From the IMG/VR virus record IMGVR_UViG_3300042261_001312, positions 124,001 through 188,000 of that record: a stretch of 64,000 nt of DNA; one strand, written 5' to 3'. The notes under the pieces were generated by a model. The model worked only from the letters and a program-made list of their open reading frames with translations, searched no databases and had not been told where the DNA came from. A program made the translations under genes and the position numbers. This document shows, piece by piece, positions 9,504 through 57,200 of this stretch (positions are counted from its first letter, which is position 1; the number at the start of each line of letters is the position of its first letter).

Positions 9504-9518
9504 TAAAATAACTATAAA

Positions 9519-13136: not shown

Positions 13137-13145
13137 CAAATAAAT

Positions 13146-13874: not shown

Positions 13875-13875
13875 T

Positions 13876-17738: not shown

Positions 17739-17739
17739 T

Positions 17740-18756: not shown

Positions 18757-19532
18757 AAAAAGTATTAGTTATTGGCGATGGATGTCAAGATATTTTCAGG
18801 TATGGTACATGCGATAGATTATGTCCAGAAGCACCAGTTCCAGTATTTGTACCAACCAGATTTGTAATTAATGGTGGAATGGTAATTAATGTCTATGAAA
18901 ATCTCAAAGCATTGGGTGTTAATTGTGATATAGTTACCAATGATGATAGACCGATAAAAACCAGATACGTTGATGAAGTTTCGAACCAAATGATATTACG
19001 AGTGGATGAAAAGGACAGAATTAAACGTATTGGTAAAAAAGATTTAAAACTGATTGATTTTAGCAAATACTATGCAATCGTTATTAGTGACTATAATAAA
19101 GGATTCTTAGAAGAGGAAGATATTAAATATATTACTGACAATCATAATTTGACATTTGTTGACAGTAAAAAGAATTTTAATTTTAGTTGGAGCGATAATA
19201 TTAAATACATTAAGATCAACGAAAAAGAATTCAATGCAAATAAAGAATATCTCACAAATCGATATAAAAATAACTTGATTGTTACTGTTGGAAAAAATGG
19301 TGCTATTTTAAATAATAAAGACCATTTTAAACTTGAACATAAAACAGATGTCAAAGATTTGTGTGGTGCTGGTGATACATTTTTTGCCGCATTAGTTGCA
19401 GATTTCATAAAAAATGATAATATTTGCACAGCAATAACGTTTGCAAATAAATGCGCATCTTGGGCAGTTTCACAGAAAGGTGTTACTGTGATAGATGCAT
19501 CAAAAGTTTGTGATGATGGTAATTTATGTTGA
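18753..19532 (+). CDS. HldE/RfaE domain I-like heptose-7-phosphate kinase (PfkB family)
   Basis: VLVIGD...DRLCPEAPVPV, ISDYNKG, KINEKE and DLCGAGDTF motifs. Confidence 0.85.
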   Translation: MKKVLVIGDGCQDIFRYGTCDRLCPEAPVPVFVPTRFVINGGMVINVYENLKALGVNCDIVTNDDRPIKTRYVDEVSNQMILRVDEKDRIKRIGKKDLKLIDFSKYYAIVISDYNKGFLEEEDIKYITDNHNLTFVDSKKNFNFSWSDNIKYIKINEKEFNANKEYLTNRYKNNLIVTVGKNGAILNNKDHFKLEHKTDVKDLCGAGDTFFAALVADFIKNDNICTAITFANKCASWAVSQKGVTVIDASKVCDDGNLC

Positions 19533-19803
19533 CATTGACGGAACAATATGTAATTCAGATGATGGATATGTAAACGCACAGCCAATATTTGAAAACATTG
19601 CCAAAATTAATAAATTATATGATGAAGGAAATACAATCGTATACTGGACTGCAAGAGGTAGAGCAAGTGGTACTGATTGGACAGAATTGACAAATGAGCA
19701 ACTAATTAAATGGAATTGCAAGTTTAACAAGTTAATAATGAATGAAAAACCAAGTTATGACTTGCTGATTTGCGATAAGAGTAAAAGAATTGAGGAAATA
19801 TGA
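19513..19803 (+). CDS. Small HAD-family phosphatase
   Basis: YVDIDGTIC, YWTARG, EKPSYD..ICDK motifs. Start taken at ATG 19513 (track 19495). Confidence 0.75.
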   Translation: MMVIYVDIDGTICNSDDGYVNAQPIFENIAKINKLYDEGNTIVYWTARGRASGTDWTELTNEQLIKWNCKFNKLIMNEKPSYDLLICDKSKRIEEI

Positions 19804-20297
19804 CTAATAAAGTAATATATAATTTCGAAACAGAGAAGGAAGAGATTTCTCAATTACTTTATGAATTGAGGGATAAGAAAATAATATTCACTAATGGATG
19901 TTTTGATCTAATTCATACAAATCATATTAATTTACTGAGTAAATCAAAAGATTTGGGCGATGTTTTAATTGTTGGTGTAAATTCAGATCATTCAGTTAAA
20001 TTACTTAAAGGTGATGATAGACCAATTGTTTCTGAAAGTAGTAGGGTATATACGTTAAGTGGTTTACGTTCGGTTGATTACATAATTCTTTTTGATGATT
20101 ATAGTGTAGATTCATTAGTACGATTTATCAAGCCAGATATTATAACAAAAGGGGGTGATTATACTGTTGACCAACTTGATAATGTTGGTGGTACATTTAT
20201 GAAAGAATCTGGTGGAAAAACGATAATAATTTCAAATAGAGAAGAAATGTCAACAAGCGATTTGATTAGTAAAATTTTAAAAATTTATAATAAATGA
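19800..20297 (+). CDS. HldE/RfaE domain II-like heptose-1-phosphate nucleotidyltransferase
   Basis: IIFTNGCFDLIH, LIVGVNSD.SVK.LKG..RP, KGGDY and STSDLI motifs. Confidence 0.9.
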   Translation: MTNKVIYNFETEKEEISQLLYELRDKKIIFTNGCFDLIHTNHINLLSKSKDLGDVLIVGVNSDHSVKLLKGDDRPIVSESSRVYTLSGLRSVDYIILFDDYSVDSLVRFIKPDIITKGGDYTVDQLDNVGGTFMKESGGKTIIISNREEMSTSDLISKILKIYNK

Positions 20298-38246: not shown

Positions 38247-41200
38247 ATGGCAATAAATTTAAATGACAACTTCAAAATAAATGTTGGTAAGCCAATTGAT
38301 TCCAAATACTTATCAAGTGGTAACACCGCATACACATCAACTGGTTCAACTAATTTAACAATACCGATTAGTGAGAGATATCGTGGTTTAACGGTTAACA
38401 TTAATGGAGTTGAATATTGGTATAAAGATGGCGTAACCAATACAGATTTGGTTGAGAAAAAAACTGGTTCAGATTTGCCAGTTGGCGACTTTGTTACAGG
38501 TGCAACTAATTTAGGTTTTTTCAGTGGAAAGACTGGTGTACAAACATTGCCACTTAATCATTTACTTAGTGTCGATTATGATGGAAATTACGCCTCACTT
38601 TATAATTATTTCTACAGAGGTGCTGATGGAATAATATATATTGGAACACCAAGTGATGGCATTCCAAAAAGAGGATATGTAAAAACATCTGAATATGTTA
38701 AGTCGTTCTTGTGGAACGAATATACTGGTAATGCAGATTTGGTTGGATGGATATTAATTGATGGAAATATTGCTGATCAACTCGGAACGTTTCAATATAG
38801 TGCAGTGCCATCATATTATGATGGAATTACAAAATTTCCATATACTGGAAATAGTTGGACAACAGGAAGTGCATATAATAACGGTTCAAACTTAGTGGTT
38901 GATACTGTTGTTGGTAGTTTAACAACGGGTAACACCGTAACGATTGGTGGTCCTGTTTATGCAGATTTGGTTGATAATAAATTAGAGTTTAGAACAATTT
39001 ATAGTAAAACTCCCGAAATTATTGCAATATCAAGTGATAGTTCATTCATATATCTTTCTGGAAATACTGGTACAGGAAAAGTAACTGGTGCAACAAATGG
39101 TTTAAAAACAACTGGCGATAAGAAAGTTGGATTAGGTGGTACTTTAACTGGAAACACTACAATTGATGGTGCAAATATAAATAATTTACAATTTACAAAT
39201 ATAAATCAATTTCAAGTAACAACCAGTGGTAGTTCAACATCATTCAGTTTGGATTGTAATAATATATTGATGGGTGTTCGTACTGAATCAATATGCATGG
39301 CTGGTAGTGGTGGTTTGAAATATGGTGCTAATTATAGTGCAAGTTATGATGATCGTTCATTGGTAGATAAAGGATATATTGCAGGTTTAATTACAACTGG
39401 AAATAATGGTATTGTAAAGACTGGTGTTAACTTTCATTTAGGAGGTACATTAACAGGTAATACAACAATAAGTGGTTTAAATACACATGGATTATCTTTA
39501 AATTGTTTATCATCTTTTAATGTTGGATTTAATGGTGCGTCAATAATCACTGATTATGGTAATGTTGGTGGTTTGAAATATGCTGCAGATTATAGTAATC
39601 ATTTTACAGAACGTTCAATTCCAGATGTTGCATATGTATCAGCAGTTGCAAGTGGTTTGAGACCTAAAGAAGCCGTTAATGTTGCTACAACAACATCACT
39701 CCCATATCCATATACTGGTTTAACCACAATTGATGGTGTTATGGTTCAAAATGGTTGGAGAGTTTTAGTTAAAGATGAGGTGGGTTCTCCACAGTTTAAT
39801 GGTGTGTGGATTGCAAGTAGTGGTGTTTGGACACGTGCCACAGATTTTGATGGTATTCCTGTTAGTGGTGAAACAACTTCGGGCACGTATATGTGGGTAT
39901 TAACAGGTAATACTAATCAAAATACTGCATGGGTATTAACTACCCCTGATCCAATATATATTGGATCAACGGCATTAAATTTTACATTATTTACTTTAAC
40001 GATTGATGTTTTAAGTGAGCCAAATTCTGGTATTGATATCACGATGTGTAGTGGTGCACACTATATTGCGCTTGATGATTTGGGGAAATGTGTTAGGCTT
40101 AATGCAATTACTGGTGGAACAAATGGAATAACAAATTATGATGGAAGAAATCTTTGTCTTGGTGGTACATTGAGTAGTGATGTTGACATTAATTTAAATA
40201 CTGGTTTTACATTACAATTAGGAACATTTTGTAGTGGTGGACAATTGAGCGTTGGTAATTACGCAGCATCTCCATCAGATGATAATATATGTATGTTATA
40301 TTGTAATCCTATTTCGGATTATATGGGTGCATTGTCAATTTGTTCAAATGCAACCACATACTTCCAAAGTTATTCAACTGGTGCAAGTAAACAGATGTAT
40401 TTTGACTATACGAATGCATTGCAATATGGCTCTGATTATAGTAGTAGTTATACCAATCGTACATTAGTTGATAAAGGATATGTAGATAGTAAAATATCTT
40501 GTTGTGCGGCAACTGGAACTACTGTTAATAATGGTTTAACTAGAATTGGTAGTAATATAAAACTTGGTGGAACGTTAACTGGTACAACTACCATAAATAT
40601 GAGTGGTAATTCATTTCAGATTTGTAATGGTACTAATAGCGGATTAATTTTAAATACAAATTGTGCAAAACTAATTGGTGACGGTAAATCGATTACATTA
40701 AACAACACCTCACTTCAATTATCATCGGGAATTGGAAATAATTTCACAATGAGCAGTGGTGGTACGGTATATGGTAGTACAGGTAGTACAGGTATTTGCT
40801 ATGACGGTGATTACTCATCTAATTTCACCAATCGTACACTTGTTGACAAAGAATTCGTTGTTAATGCGATTATTGCCAGTGGTACAACTGGAATTGGTGG
40901 CGGTAATGGTTTAGGTAGAGTTGGTAATAACATCACACTTGGTGGAACATTAACTGGCAATACAACAATAAATGGCAATAATTCATATGGCTTATTAATA
41001 TCTACAGATACCACAGAAGCGGGAAATTATGCAAAATTCTGTGTAAATAAAACAGGTACACTTCCATCAACAACTCTTTGTACTACAGACACAACCTATG
41101 GTGGAGTTTATTTAACACTTTCAGGCATCTCTGCAACGATTGGAAATACTGGCTATGGTTTCGGAGGATTTAAATATAATAATGACAATAGTTCATATTT

Positions 41201-42392
41201 TACAAAACGTTCACTTCCTGATGTTGCATATGTTACGGGTTTAACCACAACTTCTGGTGTTCAAAGTGCGAATAATGGTTTAACAAAAACTGGATCGAAC
41301 ATTCGTTTGGGTGGTGCTTTAACTGGTAATACTACAATTACAGGTGCTTACACATTAAATATTTGTGGTGGTGCACAGTTAAACACAACTTGTGGCTATC
41401 AAATTAGTGGTAATACTGTATTCAGACTATCACCAAATTCAGCGAGAGCAATTTTCATTGGTTGTGGTGCTGGTAATGATACGATGACTGGCTGTTATAA
41501 TCTTGCTGTTGGTAACTTAACACTTGGAAGCACTACAACTGGAAGTAATAACACTGCCATTGGTAATCAAGCAATGAGAAACAACACTATTGGTGACAAT
41601 AACGTTGCAATTGGTCGTTGTGTAATGTTTAGTAATGTTTGTGGTACTGACAACGTAGCATTTGGTTATCAAGCACTTTATAACAACTCATGTGGTTGTG
41701 GTAACGTTGCTAATGGATATAAAGCACTCTTCAATAATTTGAGTGGTACACATAACCTTGCTAATGGATATAACGCATTATATGCAAACACTACTGGATG
41801 TAATAACGTTGCATATGGATTATGCGCTGGATTTAATGCATTGGGTTGTGGAAACGTATTTTTGGGAGCAAATGCAGGTTTTAACGAAAATGGTTCAAAT
41901 AAATTATACATTGAAAATTCAAATACAATTAATCCATTAATTTATGGTGAGTTTGATACTAATTGTGTAATTGTTCACGGTGCATTTAAAACAAGCGGTG
42001 CAACTTCATTATTAGTTGCTCCTGTTAGTGGTACAAGTGCTGACCAAATATTAGTTTGGAATTCAAGTGATAAAGTAATTAAAAAAGTTACTCAGGCTTC
42101 AACACAAAATGTTGTTAATGTTTGTAATGTATCTTCAAATTATACAACAACGGCTAGTGATAGTTTTGTTGGTGTAAGTGTGGCTTCAACGATTTGTTTG
42201 TATAATAGTCCTGCACTTGGTCAAAAAGTAACAATTGCAGATATTGGGTCATGTGCATTAACTAACCCAATTATAATATGTAGTCCATTGGGAATCAATG
42301 GTCAACCATTTTCAACAATTAATACTGATTATGGTTCAATAACGTTTATTTACAATGGAACATTTTGGGGTGCAGTGGCATTTGTTAATTAA
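38247..42392 (+). CDS. Long tail fibre protein
   Basis: 1381 aa. Repeated NNGL...LGGTLTGNTTI modules, KEAVNVATT..RVLVKD domain, 17-aa NxAxGxxAL repeats, C-terminal adaptor domain. Confidence 0.8.
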   Translation: MAINLNDNFKINVGKPIDSKYLSSGNTAYTSTGSTNLTIPISERYRGLTVNINGVEYWYKDGVTNTDLVEKKTGSDLPVGDFVTGATNLGFFSGKTGVQTLPLNHLLSVDYDGNYASLYNYFYRGADGIIYIGTPSDGIPKRGYVKTSEYVKSFLWNEYTGNADLVGWILIDGNIADQLGTFQYSAVPSYYDGITKFPYTGNSWTTGSAYNNGSNLVVDTVVGSLTTGNTVTIGGPVYADLVDNKLEFRTIYSKTPEIIAISSDSSFIYLSGNTGTGKVTGATNGLKTTGDKKVGLGGTLTGNTTIDGANINNLQFTNINQFQVTTSGSSTSFSLDCNNILMGVRTESICMAGSGGLKYGANYSASYDDRSLVDKGYIAGLITTGNNGIVKTGVNFHLGGTLTGNTTISGLNTHGLSLNCLSSFNVGFNGASIITDYGNVGGLKYAADYSNHFTERSIPDVAYVSAVASGLRPKEAVNVATTTSLPYPYTGLTTIDGVMVQNGWRVLVKDEVGSPQFNGVWIASSGVWTRATDFDGIPVSGETTSGTYMWVLTGNTNQNTAWVLTTPDPIYIGSTALNFTLFTLTIDVLSEPNSGIDITMCSGAHYIALDDLGKCVRLNAITGGTNGITNYDGRNLCLGGTLSSDVDINLNTGFTLQLGTFCSGGQLSVGNYAASPSDDNICMLYCNPISDYMGALSICSNATTYFQSYSTGASKQMYFDYTNALQYGSDYSSSYTNRTLVDKGYVDSKISCCAATGTTVNNGLTRIGSNIKLGGTLTGTTTINMSGNSFQICNGTNSGLILNTNCAKLIGDGKSITLNNTSLQLSSGIGNNFTMSSGGTVYGSTGSTGICYDGDYSSNFTNRTLVDKEFVVNAIIASGTTGIGGGNGLGRVGNNITLGGTLTGNTTINGNNSYGLLISTDTTEAGNYAKFCVNKTGTLPSTTLCTTDTTYGGVYLTLSGISATIGNTGYGFGGFKYNNDNSSYFTKRSLPDVAYVTGLTTTSGVQSANNGLTKTGSNIRLGGALTGNTTITGAYTLNICGGAQLNTTCGYQISGNTVFRLSPNSARAIFIGCGAGNDTMTGCYNLAVGNLTLGSTTTGSNNTAIGNQAMRNNTIGDNNVAIGRCVMFSNVCGTDNVAFGYQALYNNSCGCGNVANGYKALFNNLSGTHNLANGYNALYANTTGCNNVAYGLCAGFNALGCGNVFLGANAGFNENGSNKLYIENSNTINPLIYGEFDTNCVIVHGAFKTSGATSLLVAPVSGTSADQILVWNSSDKVIKKVTQASTQNVVNVCNVSSNYTTTASDSFVGVSVASTICLYNSPALGQKVTIADIGSCALTNPIIICSPLGINGQPFSTINTDYGSITFIYNGTFWGAVAFVN

Positions 42393-42475
42393 TTTTATTA
42401 TTAAACACATTATATGGTCTATCAAACTTTTTATATATAAAATAACGGAAATAATAATAAAATAAACCAATAATT

Positions 42476-43222
42476 ATGGCTTTAATAACTAAATTAAACT
42501 TATCAAATTCGAAAGTTTATCAAGCAACTGGTGATACGCTAAATTTATCTGGCTCGGTTAACCATTGTTCAGACCAGTGGTTCACTTAGATATGGCGAAT
42601 TAAAAACATTTACAAATAAATATGATATTGTTGATGAAATTATGTAACTGGTTTAACCACTACATCAGGAGTTCAAACGACTAATAATGGTCTAACCAAA
42701 AATGGCACAAATGTTCAATTGGGTGGTGCTTTAACTGGTAATACTACAATTTCGGGTGCGTACACACTGAATATGTGTGGCGCAAAAATAAATTCGCAAT
42801 ATGGCTATCAAATCTGTGGGCATACAATTTTATGTATATCATGTCAAACATGGGGTTCAATCTTTCTTGGCTATCAAGCAGGTACGGCTACAACAACTGG
42901 TGTAAATAATACTGGTATAAACGGTGGTCTTACACGAATTACCAATGGTCAAGGAAACGTGGGTATTGGTTATTGTTCACTTTCACGTGTTACTAGCGGA
43001 AACTATAACGTTGGTTTAGGTTGGGGTGCGGGTATGAGTAATTGTGGTAGTTGGAATATTGCAATCGGTACTGAATCTATGTACATACAAATTGGCACAG
43101 GTAATTGTAACGTTGCTATTGGTACATGTGCAATATACGGTAACTGTACTGGTACTGATAATGTTGGATTAGGTACTAGTGCTCTTTATTCTAATCTTAA
43201 TTTTCTAATAAAAAATATATAA
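42476..43222 (+). pseudogene. Frameshifted, truncated tail-fibre paralog
   Basis: ATG 42476 MALITKLNLSNSKVYQATGDTLNLSG. Two frame changes (~42560, ~42640) are needed to join the track ORF 42719-43222, which stops mid-repeat at ALYSNL. Confidence 0.7.
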
Positions 43223-43295
43223 TATTGAGATTTTTTGATTTATCTTAGTATTTATAAAAAAGTATAAAAATTTATAATCAAATAAACTTTAAAAA

Positions 43296-44198
43296 ATGGA
43301 AAACGACAGAATTAGTGATAACGATAAATATATTATCTTTCATAGCGAAGGTGGACAGGGTAAGCAAATTCAGGCGACTGCAGTAATTAGAGCAATAAAG
43401 AAAAAATATCCAGATAGAAAAATTGTTTGGGTTACATCATGGGATGCGCCTGCATTTGGTAATCCAAATGTGTTTAGGTTTTTTTCACACGGAGAAGTGA
43501 GGTATTTCAAAGATTACATCAAAGATGATACAATCATAATGAAGCATGATCCATATAATGAAACGGATCATATTTTAAGAAAAGAGCATCTAACTGAAAC
43601 TTGGTGTAAAATGTTTGACATTCCTTTTGATGGAAGTAAACCAGAGTTGTTTTTAAACCCCAGAGAACTCGAAATTGCGAAGGATAAGATTAAACCAGAT
43701 GGTAGACCAATTATGCTAATACAAACGCATGGTGGTTCTCCTACGACACAATACTCCAAAAAATCTTGGTATAGAGATATGCCGATTGAGATCGCACAAA
43801 AACTTGTGAATTATTTCGCCAAATCATATAGAATTTTACATATTAGAATGCCAGAACAGCCTGCTTTGCAAAATACCGAAGCATTGAATTTACCATTAAG
43901 AGAATTATATGGCGTATTTCCATTATCATCAAAAAGATTATTTATTGATAGTTTCGCCGCACATGCTGCACGTGCACTTGATTTACAAAGCACGGTTTGT
44001 TGGATAGGCAATTCATCTAAAGTATTTGGATATGAAGAACATATCAACGTACAACCAAATGCAAATATTATTAATAAATTTGATAAATATACATATTTGG
44101 TTGATGATATTTCTGGTCAAATTCAACAATTTCCATATGATACAGTTAATCTTTTCGATATTAACAAAATTATTGAAGCAGTGAATAAACAAAAATAA
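43296..44198 (+). CDS. GT9-like (heptosyltransferase-type GT-B) glycosyltransferase
   Basis: GGQGKQIQATAVIRAIKKKYPDRKI, KPELFL, IQTHGG, FIDSFAAHAARA motifs. Own promoter motif and terminator. Confidence 0.65.
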   Translation: MENDRISDNDKYIIFHSEGGQGKQIQATAVIRAIKKKYPDRKIVWVTSWDAPAFGNPNVFRFFSHGEVRYFKDYIKDDTIIMKHDPYNETDHILRKEHLTETWCKMFDIPFDGSKPELFLNPRELEIAKDKIKPDGRPIMLIQTHGGSPTTQYSKKSWYRDMPIEIAQKLVNYFAKSYRILHIRMPEQPALQNTEALNLPLRELYGVFPLSSKRLFIDSFAAHAARALDLQSTVCWIGNSSKVFGYEEHINVQPNANIINKFDKYTYLVDDISGQIQQFPYDTVNLFDINKIIEAVNKQK

Positions 44199-44217: not shown

Positions 44218-44250
44218 AAAATCCCGTCAAATTTGGCGGGATTTTTTGTT
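44218..44250 (+). terminator. Intrinsic terminator
   Basis: AAAATCCCGTCA/TGGCGGGATTTT plus T-tract. Confidence 0.8.
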
Positions 44251-44372: not shown

Positions 44373-47267
44373 ATGGCAATTTCAATTGATACAAAACTGA
44401 ATTTAAATAACAATAAATTTGAACAATGTGTAGGTGATACAATGATTTTATCTGGATGTACAGATATTCATGGCACATTTCAGGTTTCAAGTGGCGCAAC
44501 ACTATCTATATTACCCAATCGTGGAAATGGAAAGGTATTAACTTCTGATGCAAGTGGAAATGCTACTTGGCAAACTCCTGCACCAAGTGGTATTTTAACA
44601 GCAAATAATGGTTTAAATGTTATTGATTCAAACGTTCGTTTAGGCGGTGCTTTAACTGGAAATACTTCGATTACTGGTGCTTATACATTAAATATTTGCA
44701 ATGGTGCTAAATTAAATACTACTTGTGGCTATCAAATTTCAGGAACTACCATCCTTAGAACTGCACCAAATACAATTAGCAGTGTTTATATTGGTTGTAA
44801 TGCAGGTAATAACACCTCAACTGGAACAAATAATTTTGTAATGGGATGGAATGCACTTGCATGCAATACAACGGGTGGTGATAATCTTGCGATTGGTTTG
44901 ATGGCTCTTAATAATAATACAACGGGTGGCGAAAATATTGCAATTGGTCGCCAATCTCTTAATAGTAATACTTGTGGTTGGGATAATACTGCGATAGGTA
45001 GTCAAGCACTTTATAAAAATACCACTGCATGTAATAACATTGCAATCGGTCCGCAAGCACTTCAAAATAATACCACAACTAGTAATAATATTGCAATTGG
45101 TGCTACTGCACTTTATAGCAATACTGGGGGAACAAATAATATCGGTTTGGGATATCAATCGCTTTATTGTAATACAACTGGTTGTAATAATATTGCAAAT
45201 GGTTATTCTGCACTTATGTGCAATACAATTGGTTGCAATAACATTGCAATGAGTTATCAAGCACTTAGGTGTAACACAACTGGTAATAATAACGTTGCAT
45301 TAGGTTGTCAAGCACTTATGTGTAATACAACTGGTTGTAATAATATTGCAAATGGTTATCAAGCACTTTATAGTAATACTAGTGGTTGTGCTAATACTGC
45401 AATCGGATTTCAGGCATTATATTCTAATTTAACTGGATGTAATAACTTTGCTGTTGGTTATATGGCATTACGTAATAGCACAACAGGAAGTAATAACATC
45501 GCCAATGGTTTCAATGCATTGCGTTTCAATACAACAGGAAGTAATAATATTGCCAATGGTTTATGTGCATTATATTGCAACACTGGTGGCACATATAATA
45601 TTGCAATGGGTCAATATGCTCTATATGGTAATACGTGTGGTACACATAACACTGCAATGGGTGTGTATACTTTATATTGTAATACTTGTGGGTGTAATAA
45701 TTTTGCTGCAGGGTATTATGCACTTCATAGTAATACAACTGGTAGTTATAATATTGCATTAGGCTATACTGCATTATATTCCAATACAGGTGGCACACAT
45801 AATATTGCCAATGGATACCAAGCACTTTATAGTAATACTAAAGGAAATTATAATATTGCTTTAGGATGTAATGCATTATGTGCTAATACTTGTGGTTGTT
45901 ATAATGTTGCATTGAGTAGTGGTGCATTAAATAATAATACGAGTGGAAATAATAATCTTGCCGCTGGACACCAAGCACTTTATAGTAATACTTGTGGCTG
46001 TCTTAACACTGCAATTGGTTGTCAGGCATTATATTCAAATAAAGTTGGAAGTAACAATTTTGCAGTAGGCTATCAATCACTTTTTGGTAATACTAGTGGT
46101 TGTACTAATAGTGCAATAGGATATCAAGCATTGCGTTATAATACAATTGGTAGTGATAATTTTGCAATTGGCAATCAAGCACTTTATTATAATACTGGTG
46201 GTACAAGTAATACTGCTATTGGATATAATGCTTTATTCTATAATACGAAAGGAACTGATAATATCGCAATTGGCTGTCAAGCACTTAATTGTAATATTGG
46301 TGGTACAAATAATATTGGATTGGGTTATAGTACATTATATTCCAATAAAAATGGTAGTAACAATTTTGCAAGTGGCTATGCTTCTCTTTATTGTAATACT
46401 GGTGGTACTGGTAATGTTGCAATAGGTGGTTATACATTATTTGCCAACACGAAGGGAAATTATAATGTTTCGATTGGTTATGCGACAATGCGTAACAACA
46501 CGAATGGATGTTATAACGTTGCAGCAGGATATAACTCGTTGTGTAAAAATACAAGTGGTTGTCATAATGTTGCGATAGGCAATTTAGCATTACAAGGAAA
46601 CACGATTGGTTCTAGTAATTTTGCCATAGGCTCTGCTGCGCTTTATAGTAACACGGGAGGTACGGATAATATAGCAATCGGCTCTTCTGCATTATTTTTA
46701 AATTCAAAGGGAACTAATAATATTGCATTAGGTTGTCAAGCGGGTTATTTAAATATAACTGGGAATAGTAGTGTATTTATCGGAACTTGTGCAGGTTACA
46801 ACGAAACCAAGTCAAATAGATTATATATTGCCAATTCATCAACAACTTCGTTGATCTATGGCGAATTTGATAATAAGATAGTTAAGGTTGATGGGTGTAT
46901 GTGTATCACCAAATTACCTGCAAAAAGTACTGAAACAAATGTGGTGTTTATTGATACTGCAGGTAAATTAAGTTCAGGTGCTACAAGTGGTGGCAGTAGT
47001 TTAACTGTATCTATAATTACTGGTGCAACAAATGCAGTTAAGAACTATTTATATGTGTTAACCGCATCTTTGACATTAACATTGCCAGCATCACCATCGG
47101 ATGGGGATTCATTAAAAGTATCTAACTTATCAAATACTACGACAAGTGTATTGGGTAGAAATGGTAATAAAATTATGGGACTGTCTGAAGACCTGACAAT
47201 TGATAAATTAAACGCAGGATTTGAAGTAATTTACACAGGTTCTGCATATGGATGGGTTATAATTTAA
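44373..47267 (+). CDS. Tail fibre with long 17-aa beta-roll repeat array and C-terminal adaptor domain
   Basis: Roughly 38 NxAxGxxALxxNTxG repeats; C-terminus TLPASPSDGD...RNGNKIMG...GWVII. Confidence 0.8.
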   Translation: MAISIDTKLNLNNNKFEQCVGDTMILSGCTDIHGTFQVSSGATLSILPNRGNGKVLTSDASGNATWQTPAPSGILTANNGLNVIDSNVRLGGALTGNTSITGAYTLNICNGAKLNTTCGYQISGTTILRTAPNTISSVYIGCNAGNNTSTGTNNFVMGWNALACNTTGGDNLAIGLMALNNNTTGGENIAIGRQSLNSNTCGWDNTAIGSQALYKNTTACNNIAIGPQALQNNTTTSNNIAIGATALYSNTGGTNNIGLGYQSLYCNTTGCNNIANGYSALMCNTIGCNNIAMSYQALRCNTTGNNNVALGCQALMCNTTGCNNIANGYQALYSNTSGCANTAIGFQALYSNLTGCNNFAVGYMALRNSTTGSNNIANGFNALRFNTTGSNNIANGLCALYCNTGGTYNIAMGQYALYGNTCGTHNTAMGVYTLYCNTCGCNNFAAGYYALHSNTTGSYNIALGYTALYSNTGGTHNIANGYQALYSNTKGNYNIALGCNALCANTCGCYNVALSSGALNNNTSGNNNLAAGHQALYSNTCGCLNTAIGCQALYSNKVGSNNFAVGYQSLFGNTSGCTNSAIGYQALRYNTIGSDNFAIGNQALYYNTGGTSNTAIGYNALFYNTKGTDNIAIGCQALNCNIGGTNNIGLGYSTLYSNKNGSNNFASGYASLYCNTGGTGNVAIGGYTLFANTKGNYNVSIGYATMRNNTNGCYNVAAGYNSLCKNTSGCHNVAIGNLALQGNTIGSSNFAIGSAALYSNTGGTDNIAIGSSALFLNSKGTNNIALGCQAGYLNITGNSSVFIGTCAGYNETKSNRLYIANSSTTSLIYGEFDNKIVKVDGCMCITKLPAKSTETNVVFIDTAGKLSSGATSGGSSLTVSIITGATNAVKNYLYVLTASLTLTLPASPSDGDSLKVSNLSNTTTSVLGRNGNKIMGLSEDLTIDKLNAGFEVIYTGSAYGWVII

Positions 47268-50579: not shown

Positions 50580-53500
50580 ATGGGAATATTTGCACTTGAT
50601 ATATTAACTGGACAACAATATTTGTTCAGCGGCAATTTTAGTAGTGGTTCGACTACTGGAATTCAAACTGCTTGTAATGGTCTAACTTCTTCTGGCACAA
50701 ATGTAAAACTAGGTGGTCAATTAACTGAGGATACAAATATTTATGGTGCGTATACTCTAAATATAGGCAATTGTGCATTTTTAAGCACAAACACTGGTTA
50801 TCAAATAAGCGGATGTACTATACTTACGCTATCATCTAATAATGCATCAAACATATATGTTGGGGAACGTGCTGGTTTACTTGCAAAAATTACTAATGGT
50901 TGTAATAATAACGCTATTGGGTATCAAGCACTTTTTAATAATACAGATGGCTCGGATAATGTCGGAATTGGTTTCAATTCTTTATATTGGAATAAATATG
51001 GGTGCGACAATGTTGCATTGGGTCAGCAAACACTTTCAAACAATACTTGTGGTTGTTTTAATAACGCAGTTGGTCACGGTTCGTTGATATTGAATACCAG
51101 TGGTTGTTTTAACGCTGCAATGGGATATCGTGCACTTTACTATAATTGCGGGGGTAATAATAATATTGCAATTGGTTGCAATGCTGCCTTTTCAAATGTA
51201 AGTGGCTCAAGTAGTGTGTTTATTGGCAATTGTGCGGGTTATGACGAAACAAAATCAAATAGACTTTATATAGCAAATAATGCAACAAGTTCATTAATTT
51301 ATGGTGAATTTGACAATAAATTATTGAAAGTCAACGGAGCATTAACGGTTACTGGAATCACTTGTTTAAGTGGTCTACCTGCAAAAACAAGTGAAACAAA
51401 CATTGTTTATATAAATGCTGCAGGTAAGTTAAGTTGCGGTGCTACAAGTAGTGGAGGAATTTCAACAGCGAATAATGGCTTAAATGTTGTTGGTACTAAT
51501 GTTCGTTTGGGTGGTGCATTAACTGGAAATACAACTATTACTGGTGCATATACTTTGAATGTTTGTAATAGTGCAAAATTAAATACTGCATGTGGTTATC
51601 AAATAAGTGGAAATACTATATTGAGAACATCGCCAAATGTAATAAGCAGTGTTTATATCGGTTGTTGTGCGGGTAATAACACCTCAACTGGAACAAATAA
51701 TTTTGTGGCTGGTTTTGGTTCTTTAAGTGGAAATACGACGGGTTGTAATAATATTGCAATTGGTTGTAATGCACTTTCAAAAAATACTGTGGGTTGTAAT
51801 AATATTGCAGGTGGTTTTGGTTCTCTTTATTTAAACACGGGTGGAACAAATAATATCGCTTTAGGTTCTAAAGCACTTTACTGTAATACTAATGGTTGTG
51901 GCTTAATTGCAATTGGTTACCAAGCATTATATAATAACAAATATGTAAATGCTTCATGTAATGGAAAATATAATACCGCAATTGGACATGGTGCACTGAG
52001 TGGTAGTACCATTGGTTGTGGCAATACTGCAATTGGTTATGGAGTTTTAACTGGAAATACGTGTGGACATAATAACACTGGAATTGGGTATAAATCACTT
52101 CAAAAAAATACGTGTGGTTGTAATAATACCGCAATAGGAAATACTGCACTCCAAAAAAATACTAGCGGTTCTAATAATATTGCAATAGGGTGTCAAACAC
52201 TTTATTGTAATGAGAATGGTACTAGTAATTTTGCCGCAGGCTATAGAACACTTTATAATAATTGTTTTAACTATAATATTGGAATTGGTGAATATACCTT
52301 ATATCAAAATATATGGGGTAGTGGTAATGTTGGAATCGGTGGTTATGCTTTACTTGGTAACTATGTTGGAAATAATAACATAGGAATTGGAACTCAAACG
52401 CTTTATAATAATTATAATGGTTCTAATAACGTCGCTTTAGGTTATGGCTCACTTCAAAATAGTTATTGTGGTTGTGATAATATAGCATTGGGATGTAGCG
52501 CACTTTTTGGAAATGCTTATGGTTGTTCCAATATTGTTTTAGGATATAATGCATTGTACACCAATTGTTCTGGGTGTGATAATATTGCCAGTGGCAATCA
52601 AGTACTTTATTATAATGTTACTGGATGTAGTAATATTGCATTGGGTGCATATGCTGGTTACCTTAATGTTGGTAGTGGAAATACATTTATCGGTAATAAT
52701 GCTGGTTATTCGGAGACTGGTTCAAGTAAATTATATATTGCGAATTCATCTGGAAACACATTGATTTATGGTGAATTCAATAATAAGATGGTTAAGGTTG
52801 ATGGTTGTGTATGTATAACCAAACTACCACCTAAAACAGTAGAAACTAATATAATATATATCGATGATGTAGGTAAATTAAGTTCAGGCGCTACAAGCGG
52901 TGGTGGTGGTGGAATTGGTTGGTCAAATCTAACATATGGTTCAACTGTTGCTGGTTGTGGAACAATTGCAAGCGGTACTTCATGCAATAATACGTATTAC
53001 GGCGTTAGTGCTGGAACTGCAACAACTACTGGTTGTAATAATGTGGCAATCGGTAGTGGTGCATTAAATAGTAATACATGTGGTTATAATAATGTGGCAA
53101 TCGGTAGTGGTGCATTATGTAGTAATACCACTGGTTATAATAATGTGGCAATCGGTAGTGGTGCATTAAATAGTAATACATGTGGTTATGATAATATTGC
53201 CCAAGGATATCAGGCACTTTACAACACAATTGATGGTTTTCATAATATTGCCCAAGGTTATCAGGCATTATATAATAATACGTTTGGTACAGATAATATT
53301 GCCCAAGGTTATCAGGCATTATATAATAATACGTATGGTACATATAATTTTGCTGCAGGTAATCAAGCATTATTGTGCAACACGTCGGGTAATTTTAATA
53401 CTGCAATTGGATATCAAGCACTTCTTGTAAATACAACTGGCTGTTATAATATTGCTATTGGTAGACAAACGCTTGCAAGCAATACTTGTGGTAATTATAA

Positions 53501-54230
53501 TACTGCATTAGGCTATTCTACGTTGGTGAATAATACCAGTGGTTGTTATAACATAGCCAATGGTTATTCTGCATTAAATGGCAATTCAACTGGTTGTTAT
53601 AATATAGCCAATGGCTATTATGCGTTAAGATGTAATAGCAGTGGTAAGTATAATATAGCCAATGGTTATTGTTCGTTACATACTAATTTAACTGGTTCTG
53701 GTAATACTGCCAGTGGACATTATTCACTTAAAGCAAATTCAAGTGGCTGTAATAATATTGCAATTGGTACATGTGCTGGTTTTAACATCACTACTGGTTC
53801 AAATAATGTGGCAATTGGTAATATTGCTGGTGTTGAAGCGGCTGTTAAAAATATTACAACAGAATCAAATCAAGTTGTAATTGGTAATAATTCAACAACA
53901 AATGCATTTATAAAAGTTGCATGGACTACAGGTTCTGATGCAAGAGATAAAATATGCTTTAACGACATTAATCATGGATTGAATTTTGTAAATCAACTTA
54001 AACCAGTTTCATTTTATTTTAGAGAGTGTCGTGAAAGCGAAATACCTTATGGTAGTTTAAGATATGGATTTAAAGCACAAGATGTTTTGGAATTGGAGGG
54101 AACTAGTCCAGTAATTGTAAACAATTGTGATTCTGATTATTTAAAATTGAACGAAACATATTTAATACCAATATTAGTTAATGCAATCAAAGAATTGAAA
54201 GCAGAAATCGAAATTTTGAAAAATAAATAA
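50580..54230 (+). CDS. Tail fibre with three 17-aa repeat blocks and C-terminal intramolecular chaperone (peptidase S74-like)
   Basis: SDARDK...LKPVSF..YGFKAQDV...LIPILVNAIKEL C-terminus; repeat blocks separated by LYIANS..LIYGEFDNK connectors. Confidence 0.85.
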   Translation: MGIFALDILTGQQYLFSGNFSSGSTTGIQTACNGLTSSGTNVKLGGQLTEDTNIYGAYTLNIGNCAFLSTNTGYQISGCTILTLSSNNASNIYVGERAGLLAKITNGCNNNAIGYQALFNNTDGSDNVGIGFNSLYWNKYGCDNVALGQQTLSNNTCGCFNNAVGHGSLILNTSGCFNAAMGYRALYYNCGGNNNIAIGCNAAFSNVSGSSSVFIGNCAGYDETKSNRLYIANNATSSLIYGEFDNKLLKVNGALTVTGITCLSGLPAKTSETNIVYINAAGKLSCGATSSGGISTANNGLNVVGTNVRLGGALTGNTTITGAYTLNVCNSAKLNTACGYQISGNTILRTSPNVISSVYIGCCAGNNTSTGTNNFVAGFGSLSGNTTGCNNIAIGCNALSKNTVGCNNIAGGFGSLYLNTGGTNNIALGSKALYCNTNGCGLIAIGYQALYNNKYVNASCNGKYNTAIGHGALSGSTIGCGNTAIGYGVLTGNTCGHNNTGIGYKSLQKNTCGCNNTAIGNTALQKNTSGSNNIAIGCQTLYCNENGTSNFAAGYRTLYNNCFNYNIGIGEYTLYQNIWGSGNVGIGGYALLGNYVGNNNIGIGTQTLYNNYNGSNNVALGYGSLQNSYCGCDNIALGCSALFGNAYGCSNIVLGYNALYTNCSGCDNIASGNQVLYYNVTGCSNIALGAYAGYLNVGSGNTFIGNNAGYSETGSSKLYIANSSGNTLIYGEFNNKMVKVDGCVCITKLPPKTVETNIIYIDDVGKLSSGATSGGGGGIGWSNLTYGSTVAGCGTIASGTSCNNTYYGVSAGTATTTGCNNVAIGSGALNSNTCGYNNVAIGSGALCSNTTGYNNVAIGSGALNSNTCGYDNIAQGYQALYNTIDGFHNIAQGYQALYNNTFGTDNIAQGYQALYNNTYGTYNFAAGNQALLCNTSGNFNTAIGYQALLVNTTGCYNIAIGRQTLASNTCGNYNTALGYSTLVNNTSGCYNIANGYSALNGNSTGCYNIANGYYALRCNSSGKYNIANGYCSLHTNLTGSGNTASGHYSLKANSSGCNNIAIGTCAGFNITTGSNNVAIGNIAGVEAAVKNITTESNQVVIGNNSTTNAFIKVAWTTGSDARDKICFNDINHGLNFVNQLKPVSFYFRECRESEIPYGSLRYGFKAQDVLELEGTSPVIVNNCDSDYLKLNETYLIPILVNAIKELKAEIEILKNK
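53037..53342 (+). repeat. Six tandem 51-bp units (two near-identical triplets)
   Basis: Units at 53037 and 53139 are identical over 51 bp; units at 53241 and 53292 differ at 2 positions. Confidence 0.9.
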
Positions 54231-54245: not shown

Positions 54246-57200
54246 ATGGCAACATTTACAATTGATTTATTAACAGGTCTACCATATTTATTTAATAATA
54301 ATTTTAGCGGAGGTACAACATCGGGTACAACGTATCCTCAAGTAGCACAATATATTGATCTACCCTCACCTGCTTCGTCATATGCTGGCGATATTTATGT
54401 TGTCAGACAACCATATGGGACTTATATGACGGGAATTAAAGATGCTGGACTATATTGGTCAAATAATATTAACTGGGTTAGGCTCGGTGATATTACGGCG
54501 TATTTTAATTCGGATAATTTTCAAGTATTTGATGATACTGATAATACAAAGGGACTTAAATTTATTACTTCTGGATTTACTGGAGGAGCAACTCGTTATG
54601 CAACATTTAAGGATAAAAATGGTGTAGTTGTATATCAGGAAGAAATCAACACATATACAGGAACAACTGCCCCAAATACGTTTTTACGTTTAAATCAAAC
54701 TTCTCCTCAAAAAGTTTTTGGTGGAACTCCGATATTTCCATCAATACAATATAATCTAACAGGTGCAACCGCAACCGCAGTTGGTAAATTACAATGGAGT
54801 CCAGATGACTTAACGCTTGAATTTGGGGTAAATTCTGATGTTACACTACAAATTGGGCAAGAAGAAATTGTTCGTGTTGTTAACAAATCGGGTGCACCAA
54901 TGCATAATGGTCAATTGGTGGTTATTAGTGGTGCTAGTGGTAATAAACCAGCAGTTGTTTTAGCCAATGCAAGTAACAAAGATACTGCATTTAAGAAAAT
55001 ATTAATGCTAACCCAAGATATTGGTAATAATAACAATGGCTTTGCCACATCTAGCGGTTTGGTTCATGGATTGAATACGTTCGCATATAGTGCAGGAACT
55101 CGCTTATATTTAAGTACCACTGGTGGGAGTTGGACAAATGTTCCACCACCAGCACCCGCATATACAGTGCCAGTTGCGGTGGTAACATATGAACATATAA
55201 ATCAGGGTGTTGTGCTGGTATTTACAGGCATTTCACCACTTCCTAGATTGGAAGACTTGAGTGATGTTAACGGAACACCACTAACTTCAAGTGGACAATT
55301 TCCAATTTGGAATAATGTTAATAAATATTTTGATTTTACCGCTAACATCAATGATTATGTTCCATATTCAGCATATACTGGCTTACAGGGTGTTACTGAA
55401 GTTGGTGCAAGTACAAATATTGAATCAACATTTAATAGTGGTTTGGTAACAAATAAAATTAGACCAACTGGTGATACGATAAATGCACTTCAGGTTACAA
55501 AAGCAAATGGTACTACTGCAGTGATAAATGTTGATACTGTTAGTGGTTTTACTGGTTTTGGAACGACAACCCCAGATACGCTTATTAACATATATGGTAC
55601 TGACATAAAGGATTCGAATCCCGATTTAATCCAAACCAATGCGTTGCGTATAGATGGTTTGGTTGCATCAGATAAAGAAATTCAATGGGTGGATAATAAT
55701 ACTGTGAATTGGGTGGCAGGTACGTATAGAAATGAAAATGCAAGATATTGGTATTTATATAATCAAGATACTGGTACTGTGCCAATTGTGGCTTCTTCTG
55801 GTGGTAGAATTGGTATAAATAGTCCTTCAAATATTGTTGATTATCATCCCTTCTTGATTTCAGGTGGAACAGATGATTTAAAATTAAGTGGTACATATGA
55901 TAAATATTTTACATCATTGTTTCAAGTAAAAATTAATAGCATTGGTGTAACAGATACTTTTATTTGGAGGGTTTCCTATGATAAGGGAGTTAATTATGGG
56001 TCTTGGTCATCTTCTAATCCATGTACTACAGGAATTACATTATTGGAAAGTGGCGTTTACGTTACATTTGAAAATGTCAGTGGTCATATTTTAAATACTA
56101 TGTGGGGTTTTGCGGCATTTTCGCAATTACCTACTGCATCACTTACAGTACATCCAAATGGATTTAATGAAATATTATTGAATCCAGATTATACTTTAAA
56201 TGTTGACAACTATATTGATGAAACGGGTACTTTAAGTACATCTGATAATGATATGTTTATGCCAATATTTAACGCTGGAAATACAAATGCCGCATTATAT
56301 GTGGGTTCTTTGCTTAAATTTAACACTACCTTTTTTCATTTACATTCGTATGGTGCTGGTATAACGTTAATTACTGAGTATTGGAATGGCAGTTCGTGGG
56401 TGGACATTTCGATTGGAAATCCATTCTATCTTGATGGAACAAATGATTTAACAAAAAATGGCAACATTTCATGGAATAGTTCATCAATGAGTGGTTGGAT
56501 TAAGGCATATTTACCAAATAGAATTGAAGAAGGATATGATTTGTATTGGGTTCGTTTTAGAACTGCAAGCATTCCATCAGCAATTCCATATGTGCAAAGT
56601 GTGATGTTGAATGGTGATAAACGAATTTCAATATTTAGTGCAGAATTAGATTACAATTCAAAATTTTTTGTTGATGCTATTGGTAGGACTAGTATTGGCG
56701 GTGGCACAATTACTGGTAATAATGTGTTGCAAATTAGTGAAAATATAACAACATTAGACGTAGTGGGTGCATCCCCAAGTTTAGTTGAAATTGATTCTGT
56801 AAATGCCGATGCGGTTGACCTAAAAATGCGATTAGTTACTGATGATGCGTGTGGTAGTGGCTTTGTAATTGCTAAATCAAGAGGTACTTTAGATTGTTCA
56901 ACAAATGTAATGTATAATGATAAAATTAGTCATATTTGCTCAAGGGCGACAGTAAATAATATAGCCACAACTCTTTCGCAAATTGAAACAATATATAAAG
57001 GTAATGGAACTACCGCTTATGGTGATATGATGATATGTACACCAAATGGTAGCGTATTAACTGAAAAAATAAGAGTGTCTGCAGTTGGTACTGGATTTGG
57101 TGAAATTACACCAACAGCAATAATACATATTCAATCAGGCACAACAACACTTGCCCCATTGAAATTTACGTCAGGAAATTTACTTTCGTCTCCTCAAATA

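What the first reader, a model, noticed from the sequence alone, without database searches (positions are those of the whole stretch)
43296..44198. GT9-like glycosyltransferase inside the tail-fibre cluster plus a phage NDP-heptose pathway: possible fibre heptosylation
Seen: a GT9-like gene with its own promoter motif and terminator sits between Asn/Ser/Thr-rich repeat fibres. HldE-like kinase, HAD phosphatase and HldE-like nucleotidyltransferase genes lie at 18753-20297. Established: these steps make ADP-heptose, and bacterial AAH/TibC enzymes heptosylate repetitive beta-helical adhesins. Inference: the phage glycosylates its own fibres or virion. The GGxGD motif reads GGQGK, with Lys where WaaC-type enzymes have the catalytic Asp, implying altered chemistry. 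No GmhA isomerase is in the window.
Basis: partly seen in the sequence, partly recalled or inferred. Interest (0 to 1): 0.68.

Follow-up and report, generated by a model that had tools for sequence, protein, structure and literature searches.

The report
Phage GT9-like enzyme in tail-fibre module
A jumbo phage carries, among its tail-fibre genes, a separately transcribed enzyme with the fold of bacterial heptosyltransferases but a lysine where the catalytic aspartate should be; it belongs to a large, unstudied, phage-only family that most likely decorates fibre proteins with sugar, though this is not proven.

Summary
ORF 43296-44198 (300 aa) has no Pfam, PHROG, NCBIfam or PDB sequence hit. Its AlphaFold model matches only GT9 structures strongly (Z 18.6-22.8; next GT-B Z 11.6), and a family profile aligns to E. 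coli WaaC/F/Q/U (hhalign 97.9%). Lys23 sits exactly on WaaC's catalytic Asp13 and is about 93% conserved. The donor-side D-S-x-x-x-H motif is kept.

The gene has its own copy of a genome-wide phage promoter motif and a strong terminator. It lies between Asn/Ser/Thr-rich fibres, one with a 17-residue repeat.

The family is large (903 clusters at 50% identity) and essentially phage-only. In 58 related jumbo-phage loci it is a core gene of the fibre cassette, far better conserved than the fibres. In distant phages, including pelagiphage HTVC112P, it again adjoins tail-fibre genes. Its commonest partner there is a sulfotransferase with PAPS-synthesis genes.

The HldE-like kinase, HAD phosphatase and adenylyltransferase trio is real, but it belongs to a variable glycan island that many relatives lack.

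Fibre glycosylation is the best reading (about 0.4). Host-receptor masking and a non-catalytic role remain open, and the donor sugar is unknown.

The parts
43247..43256 (+). Phage promoter-like motif AGTATTTATA, 40 nt upstream of the GT start codon
   Evidence: 6 copies in the window against 0.52 expected. 35 copies in the genome, 32 followed by an ATG-started ORF within about 130 nt, among them the portal gene and the 964-aa fibre gene.
43296..44198 (+). GT9-fold (GT-B) glycosyltransferase-like gene, 300 aa (P0001). It has Lys23 in place of the GT9 catalytic Asp and keeps the D218-S219-x-x-x-H223 donor motif.
44218..44250 (+). Intrinsic terminator: 12-bp stem, 4-nt loop, U-run
   Evidence: dG -17.5 kcal/mol, z -4.18, 0 of 200 shuffles as stable.
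42470..43222 (+). Decayed paralogue of the 964-aa fibre gene: it matches residues 1-250, has in-frame stops and is truncated
   Evidence: tblastn 37.5% identity, E 4e-33, with stops in the matching frame. PHROG tail-spike hits on the open remnant.
37092..38234 (+). Fibre-module protein (380 aa), conserved upstream of the GT in 45 of 58 clade loci
   Evidence: N+S+T 31%.
38247..42392 (+). Fibre-like virion protein, 1381 aa
   Evidence: PHROG virion structural and tail spike hits. N+S+T 32%.
44373..47267 (+). Fibre of 964 aa with about 37 copies of a 17-residue Asn/Thr/Gly-rich repeat. It has the same promoter motif at 44266-44275.
   Evidence: PHROG 23837, 6002 and 4636 hits at 1e-94 to 1e-119. 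Autocorrelation 0.53 at lag 17..
50580..54230 (+). Second repeat-type fibre, 1216 aa
   Evidence: PHROG tail spike and virion structural hits.
54246..59219 (+). Large fibre or decoration-like protein, 1657 aa
   Evidence: PHROG head decoration and tail fibre hits.
18753..19532 (+). HldE domain I-like PfkB sugar kinase (259 aa; GAGD motif present)
   Evidence: TIGR02198 2.9e-31, 108.8 bits against a cut-off of 345..
19495..19803 (+). Minimal HAD phosphatase (102 aa; DxDGT motif)
   Evidence: Weak HAD hits. Motifs read.
19800..20297 (+). HldE domain II-like heptose-1-phosphate adenylyltransferase (165 aa)
   Evidence: TIGR02199 9.6e-48, 161.7 bits against a cut-off of 181.5.
8808..18756 (+). Variable glycan-biosynthesis island: GT2-type transferases, WbuC cupin, NeuD/PglB-type acetyltransferase, short DegT aminotransferase, GDP-mannose 4,6-dehydratase, FkbM methyltransferase, WecB epimerase
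   Evidence: Content differs between complete clade genomes.

Best explanation
The gene encodes a soluble GT-B enzyme from a large, phage-restricted and so far uncharacterised branch of the GT9 (heptosyltransferase) superfamily.

Shown:
- It has the GT9 fold.
- It keeps the C-terminal nucleotide-sugar signature: the G146-G147 loop, W158-x-R160-D161, and D218-S219-x-x-x-H223, which aligns to WaaC D261/H266.
- An almost invariant Lys replaces the general-base Asp of WaaC and TibC.
- It is a core, separately transcribed unit of the tail-fibre cassette, driven by the same promoter motif as the portal gene and the neighbouring fibre gene.

Inferred:
- In the infected cell's cytoplasm it transfers a sugar from a nucleotide sugar to a tail-fibre (or other virion-surface) protein before assembly.
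- ADP-heptose is the best donor guess. It would come from the host and, in this phage, be boosted by the HldE-like kinase, HAD phosphatase and adenylyltransferase trio.
- The Lys suggests altered chemistry: either another base (conserved D/E85 or H98) or an anionic or otherwise pre-activated acceptor group.
- In most distant relatives a neighbouring sulfotransferase with phage PAPS-synthesis genes probably adds sulfate to the same product.
For: Fold and homology:
-.
- The A2 profile hits WaaF at the DSxxxH motif.
- One relative passes the Pfam GT9 cut-off, and others are fused to GT25 or FkbM sugar-modifying domains.

Conservation:
- K23, D218, S219 and H223 are each conserved in at least 93% of 109 representatives that are 27-49% identical to the query.

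Phage-only family:
- 903 clusters at 50% identity.
- Atlas look-alike clusters are 100% viral.
- Only 44 loci turn up in 185,579 species genomes. 43 are MAG contigs, several of them 320-550 kb.

Core gene of the fibre cassette:
- It is present in all 58 clade loci at 61-100% identity, while the flanking fibres are 30-55% identical and are swapped between loci.
- Homing endonucleases sit beside it in relatives.

Independent lineages:
- HTVC112P gp49 starts at the stop codon of the 'putative tail fiber' gp48.
- L094, L100, L121, L135 and L075 have PHROG tail-fibre neighbours of different families.
- An ORF of at least 600 aa lies within 3 genes in 19 of 42 groups, against 28% background (p 0.013).

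Expression unit.

Donor:
- It is the only GT9-fold gene in a genome with an ADP-heptose-type trio.

Precedents:
- Phage-encoded GTs glycosylate mycobacteriophage virions (Freeman et al. 2023, as cited in PMC11256854).
- TibC heptosylates a repetitive beta-helix (PMC4358343).
Against: - There is no direct evidence for a protein acceptor. The complex prediction gave no answer.
- The catalytic Asp is missing, so activity itself is unproven. GT9-fold pseudoenzymes exist: the plant NDH subunit 7wff_a scores Z 19.0.
- The heptose trio is accessory. TIGR02199 matches only 3 of 7 complete clade genomes and none of the complete distant phages G019 and G028. HTVC112P has no such pathway annotated in the 12-kb stretch read.
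- Enrichment for large neighbours in distant relatives is modest. The more constant partner is a sulfotransferase, and its target is equally unknown.
- N-x-S/T sequons in the fibres are not enriched beyond composition.
- Genes that modify the host surface can also sit next to receptor-binding genes.
Confidence: 0.4

Rival explanations
1. Host-envelope remodelling, or receptor masking. The enzyme adds a sugar to a host LPS-core or other envelope glycolipid or glycan intermediate at the cytoplasmic face. In relatives a sulfate would be added as well. This would alter the receptor that the neighbouring fibres recognise. It would block superinfection and stop progeny being lost on cell debris, as T5 Llp does from its position beside the receptor-binding gene.
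For: - All characterised non-BAHT GT9 enzymes act on LPS inner core (established knowledge; E. coli waa locus).
- JGI annotates relatives as ADP-heptose:LPS heptosyltransferase, and a huge-phage survey lists heptosyltransferase I as an AMG (PMC10747093).
- A gene with its own promoter and terminator looks like a moron.
- The GT is much more conserved than the fibres, as a conserved inner-core acceptor would allow.
- Fusion partners GT25 and FkbM are typical of LPS/LOS assembly.
- Adjacency to receptor-binding genes is also expected for receptor-masking genes.
Against: - The family is essentially absent from cellular genomes and deeply diversified within phages, unlike recently captured host LPS genes.
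- The Asp that deprotonates the Kdo or heptose hydroxyl in LPS heptosyltransferases is replaced.
- The gene shares its promoter motif with portal and fibre genes. That suggests morphogenesis timing, which is late for remodelling the surface.
- It occurs in pelagiphages and likely Bacteroidota phages, whose cores need not contain heptose.
Confidence: 0.25
2. Non-catalytic GT9-fold protein. It would be a pseudoenzyme serving as a fibre assembly chaperone, an adaptor or a sugar-nucleotide-binding sensor, sitting where tail-fibre assembly genes usually lie.
For: - The loss of the catalytic Asp is fixed across the family.
- GT9-fold structural subunits exist (7wff_a, Z 19.0).
- In HTVC112P and L005 the gene lies immediately downstream of, or overlaps, a fibre gene, as tail-fibre assembly genes do.
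Against: - The donor-site residues (D218, S219, H223, the G146-G147 loop) are conserved at 85-96% over about 30% identity. A pure chaperone would not need them.
- Recurrent fusion or adjacency to other sugar-modifying enzymes (GT25, FkbM, sulfotransferase, PAPS genes) points to chemistry.
Confidence: 0.12
3. The GT is one step of the phage's glycan island (8.8-20.3 kb). It would help build a free or lipid-linked oligosaccharide, or a capsid-directed glycan, rather than a fibre modification.
For: - The same genome encodes four or five GT2-type transferases, Gmd, WecB, an aminotransferase, an acetyltransferase, an FkbM methyltransferase and the heptose-type trio.
- P0001 is the only GT9-fold candidate user of ADP-heptose.
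Against: - The GT is 24 kb from the island and always sits in the fibre cassette.
- The island's content varies or is missing in complete relatives that keep the GT.
Confidence: 0.1
4. DNA hypermodification. The heptose-activating trio and a GT-B enzyme would glycosylate hydroxymethylated bases in phage DNA.
For: A phage cluster of HAD/kinase, cytidylyltransferase and GT-B enzymes produced mono- and di-heptosyl-5hmC in E. coli (bioRxiv 10.1101/2023.12.21.572611).
Against: - No Tet/JBP and no C5 DNA methyltransferase was found in the genome, though the Tet/JBP search rang in no control genome and so does not show absence.
- The thymidylate-synthase homologue passes the ThyA equivalog cut-off.
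- The DNA GTs in that preprint resemble T4 beta-GT, BshA and MshA rather than GT9, whereas P0001 matches only GT9 strongly.
- The gene sits in the fibre cassette.
Confidence: 0.03

Closest known systems
LPS heptosyltransferases WaaC/WaaF (CAZy GT9; PDB 2h1h, 1psw) and the uncharacterised GT9 protein 3tov
   Same: - Two-Rossmann GT-B fold (Z 18.6-22.8).
- Profile-profile homology.
- The C-terminal D-S-x-x-x-H motif aligns to D261/H266.
- A Gly-rich beta1-alpha1 loop.
   Different: - Lys at the Asp13 general-base position.
- No Pfam PF01075 hit.
- Shorter, at 300 aa.
- Phage-only distribution.
- It lies in tail-fibre cassettes rather than in waa-type LPS operons.
Autotransporter heptosyltransferases TibC/AAH (BAHT family; PDB 4rap, 4rb4)
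   Same: - GT9-like catalytic domain (Z 19.5).
- TibC heptosylates Ser/Thr on a repetitive beta-helical adhesin encoded next door, much like a GT beside 17-residue-repeat fibres.
   Different: - TibC uses Asp110 as base and has a Cys4 iron finger, a beta-hairpin thumb and a dodecameric ring.
- P0001 has Lys at the base position, only two Cys and no N-terminal extension.
Mycobacteriophage virion glycosylation (Che8, Rita; Freeman et al. 2023)
   Same: Phage-encoded glycosyltransferases modify the phage's own virion proteins in the cytoplasm (as cited in PMC11256854).
   Different: - The reported targets are major capsid proteins. Per the announcement read, the GT genes lie near the 3' end of the genome, not in a fibre cassette.
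- The hosts are Actinobacteria.
- No sulfotransferase partner is reported there.
Phage DNA-glycosylating clusters with a heptose-activating kinase/HAD plus cytidylyltransferase (bioRxiv 10.1101/2023.12.21.572611)
   Same: A phage-encoded kinase, HAD phosphatase and nucleotidyltransferase that activate heptose from host metabolites, used by a GT-B enzyme.
   Different: - The acceptor there is 5hmC in DNA, and the GTs resemble T4 beta-GT.
- This genome shows no 5hmC route, with the caveat that the Tet/JBP search had no working control.
- The GT here is of GT9 type.

Membership tests
CAZy GT9 / Pfam PF01075 (heptosyltransferases) | GT-B fold closest to solved GT9 structures | tested here: met
   The VIA exhaustive search puts 3tov, WaaF, TibC and WaaC at Z 18.6-22.8, with the next non-GT9 fold at Z 11.6. 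Foldseek gives 6e-11.
CAZy GT9 / Pfam PF01075 (heptosyltransferases) | Sequence match to the family model | tested here: inconclusive
   No Pfam hit even at E 10, and none in the genome. Against that, hhalign to the E. coli WaaC/F/Q/U alignment gives 97.9%, E 6e-13. The A2 profile hits WaaF at E 0.0085. Relative P0224 passes the PF01075 cut-off, 22.9 against 22 bits.
CAZy GT9 / Pfam PF01075 (heptosyltransferases) | Catalytic general-base Asp in the beta1-alpha1 loop (WaaC D13, invariant in the four E. coli paralogues) | tested here: not met
   K23 aligns to D13. It is K in 93% and K/R in 95% of 109 representatives. No conserved acid lies in that loop.
CAZy GT9 / Pfam PF01075 (heptosyltransferases) | C-terminal donor-binding motif D-S/T-G-x-x-H-x-A-A-A (WaaC D261, H266) | tested here: met
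   D218 (94%), S219 (96%) and H223 (95%) align to D261/H266.
CAZy GT9 / Pfam PF01075 (heptosyltransferases) | Use of ADP-heptose as donor | not testable with these tools
   Only circumstantial: an HldE-like trio in the same genome, which is accessory in the clade.
BAHT family (TibC/AAH protein O-heptosyltransferases) | Cys4 iron-finger motif, beta-hairpin thumb and Asp110 base | tested here: not met
   P0001 has two Cys in all (C104, C235), Lys at the base position and no N-terminal extension. The features are defined in PMC4358343.
BAHT family (TibC/AAH protein O-heptosyltransferases) | Encoded next to its repetitive beta-helical substrate | tested here: met
   The gene is flanked by repeat fibres in the window and by tail-fibre genes in independent lineages. 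This is synteny only; the substrate relation is untested.
ADP-heptose pathway (GmhA, HldE/HldA, GmhB, HldE/HldC) | All four steps present | tested here: not met
   The kinase-like, HAD and adenylyltransferase-like genes are present but below the equivalog cut-offs. There is no GmhA (SIS_2) in the whole genome, so heptose 7-phosphate would have to come from the host.

The most novel reading that the evidence does not exclude
This is the founding example of a phage-specific tail-fibre modification system. A GT9-derived transferase has swapped its catalytic Asp for Lys. In most lineages it works with a phage sulfotransferase, phage PAPS synthesis and sometimes 2OG-Fe(II) oxygenases. Together they would put (sulfo)glycans on receptor-binding fibres of abundant uncultured aquatic and sediment phages, changing host recognition or shielding the fibres.
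Probability: 0.3. Interest if true: 0.78.

Novelty: new variant of a known kind. Interest (0 to 1): 0.62.

Why it matters
Phage virion glycosylation is known from only a few mycobacteriophages, where it affects capsids. A conserved enzyme built into tail-fibre cassettes would extend self-glycosylation to the receptor-binding apparatus. It occurs in hundreds of uncultured phage lineages, including jumbo phages and cultured pelagiphages.

That would bear on host-range prediction, phage engineering and the reading of 'LPS AMGs' in viromes. The Asp-to-Lys swap in an otherwise intact GT9 donor site also poses a clear enzymological question.

The recurrent pairing with sulfotransferases and PAPS genes may give a first functional context for phage sulfotransferases. 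Their role is stated to be unclear (PMC10580990).

Tried and rejected
- Single-sequence and close-homologue searches (Pfam, PHROGs, NCBIfam, PADLOC not run, PDB phmmer/hmmsearch) found nothing. Only the fold and a diverse profile revealed GT9.
- The complex prediction of the GT with residues 1-300 of the 964-aa fibre returned 'no answer' (score 0.00). It counts neither for nor against binding.
- The generic sigma-70 promoter scan was at chance in this 31% GC region. I replaced it with the genome-wide motif test.
- The search for related loci with the broad alignments A2 and A3 failed for lack of a conserved stretch. Narrower alignments worked.
- N-glycosylation sequons in the fibres are not enriched beyond composition, so I made no argument from sequons.
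- DNA glycosylation was considered and set aside.
- TibC/AAH membership was considered and rejected.
- The host could not be identified. The closest record is an uncultured 484-kb phage. The many Bacteroidota MAG labels on related contigs are only a hint.
- Literature searches for phage heptosyltransferases, jumbo-phage heptose or sulfotransferase with tail fibre found no functional study of this family.
Full report
**Setting.** The window is bases 124001-188000 of a 327,676-bp virus record that CheckV rates complete. GC content is 31%. Its closest database relative is an uncultured 484-kb phage, and no cultured relative was found. It is therefore an uncultured jumbo phage of unknown host.

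**The gene.** ORF 43296-44198 (+) encodes 300 aa (P0001). Pfam (even at E 10), PHROGs, NCBIfam and a PDB sequence search all gave nothing. A profile built from 30 close homologues also found nothing in the PDB.

The AlphaFold2 model (pLDDT 82, pTM 0.83) is a two-Rossmann GT-B fold.
- Foldseek ranks GT9 structures first: 3tov at 6e-11, then WaaC, WaaF and TibC.
- An exhaustive VIA search of 48,161 chains gives 3tov Z 22.8, WaaF 20.6, TibC 19.5, the GT9-like plant NDH subunit 7wff_a 19.0 and WaaC 18.6. The next fold scores only 11.6.
- A profile of 109 diverse family representatives (A2) aligns to E. coli WaaC/WaaF/WaaQ/WaaU (A4, taken from the K-12 waa locus) with hhalign probability 97.9%, E 6e-13.
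- The same profile hits WaaF in the PDB at the D-S-G-x-x-H motif (E 0.0085).
- One relative (P0224) just passes the Pfam GT9 cut-off.

'GT9-like' is therefore correct, as remote homology.

**Active site.** In the hhalign alignment, G22-K23 falls on G12-D13 of WaaC. D13 is invariant in the four E. coli paralogues. TibC likewise uses Asp110, which was identified by superposition on WaaC (PMC4358343).

K23 is K in 93% of the 109 representatives, which are only 27-49% identical to P0001. No conserved acid lies in that loop. The donor side is kept:
- D218 at 94%, S219 at 96% and H223 at 95%, aligned to WaaC D261/H266;
- the G146-G147 loop;
- W158, R160 and D161.

Conserved N-domain residues that could supply a base are D/E85 (90% acidic), Y87 and H98. 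Whether it means a relocated base, an anionic acceptor or a lost activity cannot be settled here.

**Transcription unit.** The decamer AGTATTTATA at 43247-43256 occurs 6 times in the window against 0.52 expected. It occurs 35 times in the genome. For 32 of these an ATG-started ORF of at least 40 aa begins within about 130 nt downstream, mostly 12-47 nt away. The genes it precedes include this GT, the 964-aa fibre gene (44266), the portal gene and several homing endonucleases.

After the stop codon, a 12-bp hairpin with a U-run at 44218-44250 folds at -17.5 kcal/mol, z -4.2. The gene is thus its own unit, driven by a promoter class it shares with morphogenesis genes. That this class is late is my inference.

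**Neighbours.**
- 38247-42392, 44373-47267, 50580-54230 and 54246-59219 match PHROG tail-spike, tail-fibre or virion-structural families.
- Their N+S+T content is 30-35%, against 15-18% in enzymes.
- The 964-aa protein is built from about 37 copies of a 17-residue repeat.
- Directly upstream of the GT, 42470-43222 is a decayed paralogue of that fibre gene with in-frame stops.
- DNA-replication genes flank the cassette.

**The family.** The word search found more than 501 relatives, many on 330-360 kb contigs. JGI labels some of them 'ADP-heptose:LPS heptosyltransferase'. The exhaustive profile search found 903 clusters at 50% identity.

The family looks phage-only:
- Atlas look-alike clusters are 100% viral.
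- A scan of 185,579 species genomes found only 44 loci. 43 are MAG contigs, mostly Bacteroidota bins and several of 320-550 kb, which are probably mis-binned phages.
- Among 50,697 GenBank phage records, only two single-cell marine viruses and the pelagiphages HTVC111P and HTVC112P carry it. Nobody has studied it.

Some members are fused to GT25 or FkbM methyltransferase domains.

**Synteny within the clade.** In all 58 IMG/VR loci of the clade, the GT (61-100% identical) sits between the 37092/38247 homologues and a variable set of fibres. Those fibres are only 30-55% identical or are replaced outright. GIY-YIG homing endonucleases lie beside it in some relatives, and L003 adds a sulfotransferase.

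**Synteny in distant phages.** 481 further viral contigs encode relatives.
- HTVC112P gp49 begins at the stop of the 'putative tail fiber' gp48.
- In L005 the gene overlaps the end of a 626-aa ORF.
- Large neighbours in L094, L100, L121, L135 and L075 are PHROG tail fibres of different families: T4-like distal fibre, collagen-like fibre, and the same repeat type as in the window.
- Across 42 non-redundant groups, 19 have an ORF of at least 600 aa within three genes, against 28% for genes of this genome (p 0.013). The enrichment is real but modest.

The most constant partner is a roughly 273-aa sulfotransferase, found in 27 of 49 groups and usually adjacent. With it come an APS kinase, a small ATP-sulfurylase-like nucleotidyltransferase, a DUF2061 protein and, in some loci, triplicated 2OG-Fe(II) oxygenases. 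The window and its genome have no sulfotransferase.

**The heptose genes.**
- 18753-19532 is HldE domain I-like (108.8 bits against a cut-off of 345; GAGD motif present).
- 19495-19803 is a minimal HAD with DxDGT.
- 19800-20297 is HldE domain II-like (161.7 bits against 181.5).

This is the ADP-beta-heptose type of route. GmhA is absent from the whole genome. The three genes close a glycan island (8.8-20.3 kb) that holds GT2-type transferases, a WbuC cupin, a NeuD/PglB-type acetyltransferase, a short aminotransferase, Gmd, an FkbM methyltransferase and WecB.

The island is accessory. TIGR02199 matches 3 of 7 complete clade genomes and neither of the complete distant phages G019 and G028. The kinase and Gmd vary independently of one another.

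P0001 is nevertheless the only GT9-fold gene in this genome. It therefore remains the best candidate consumer of ADP-heptose here, with the trio topping up a host-dependent supply. The link is plausible but not required by the data.

**Weighing the explanations.** Fibre or virion-protein glycosylation fits several findings:
- the phage-only distribution;
- core status in the fibre cassette;
- recurrence beside unrelated fibre families;
- the shared promoter motif;
- the retained donor site;
- precedents in mycobacteriophage capsid glycosylation and TibC/TibA.

Receptor masking explains the same synteny and matches what GT9 enzymes are known to do. It fits less well with the phage-only phylogeny and the lost base. 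A pseudoenzyme role is possible, but the conserved donor residues and the enzyme partners argue against it.

DNA heptosylation has a precedent. Here it lacks a visible 5hmC route, although the Tet/JBP search rang in no control genome and so does not show absence. The fold is also of the wrong type. The complex prediction was uninformative.

**Verdict.** This is a new, Lys-bearing, phage-specific variant of the GT9 kind. Its acceptor and donor are unproven.

Noticed in passing
L065-L144 (e.g. L067:8864-9685, L098:8873-9319, L117:7152-7556, L069:9733-10170, L099:7312-7968); L003:8410-9255: In distant relatives the GT9-like gene travels with a sulfotransferase (27 of 49 groups), an APS kinase, a small ATP-sulfurylase-like nucleotidyltransferase, a DUF2061 protein and sometimes triplicated 2OG-Fe(II) oxygenases. 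This looks like a self-contained PAPS/sulfation cassette in phage fibre modules. The literature says the role of phage sulfotransferases is unclear (PMC10580990).
   Followed up: partly
window 43247, 44266, 50198, 7775, 9493, 60716(-); 35 sites genome-wide: The genome-wide promoter-like decamer AGTATTTATA usually lies 12-47 nt upstream of an ATG. It precedes the portal gene, a fibre gene, the GT and several homing endonucleases, and is probably a phage-specific (late?) promoter.
   Followed up: partly
window 42470-43222: Pseudogenised, truncated paralogue of the 964-aa repeat fibre gene, with several in-frame stops. In relatives this slot holds a GIY-YIG homing endonuclease (L001, L002, L003).
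   Followed up: yes
window 7799-8821, 9519-10559, 8808-9503, 10546-11178: Two LAGLIDADG-type ORFs, each with the promoter motif, bracket a GT2_5 gene. The GT2 ORF at 10546-11178 matches only the C-terminal part of the Pfam GT2 model, so a glycosyltransferase gene may have been split by a mobile endonuclease. 7766-8821 also has a weak Phage_capsid_2 hit (E 0.003).
   Followed up: no
window 14812-15405: The DegT/PseC-type aminotransferase ORF is only 197 aa (the family is about 360-380 aa) and matches in two separated pieces. It may be degenerate.
   Followed up: no
G000:C1:100092-101213 (-), L190:958-2103: The thymidylate synthase passes the ThyA equivalog cut-off but carries an insertion of about 65 residues between the two matched halves.
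   Followed up: partly
L146-L189 (e.g. L148, L152, L153, L158, L170): Contigs of 320-550 kb carrying the phage GT are deposited as parts of bacterial MAGs (Paceibacterota, Bacteroidia, Flavipsychrobacter and others). They are probably mis-binned jumbo phages. The excess of Bacteroidota labels may hint at hosts.
   Followed up: no
L004:2009-2395 (HTVC112P gp46): The pelagiphage tail module also holds an HlyC/RTX-toxin-type lysine acyltransferase next to the tail protein genes. This is another possible tail-protein modification enzyme.
   Followed up: no
window 60029-60700 (-): A free-standing GIY-YIG/HNH-type homing endonuclease with the promoter motif lies between the fibre cassette and the primase/helicase gene.
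   Followed up: partly
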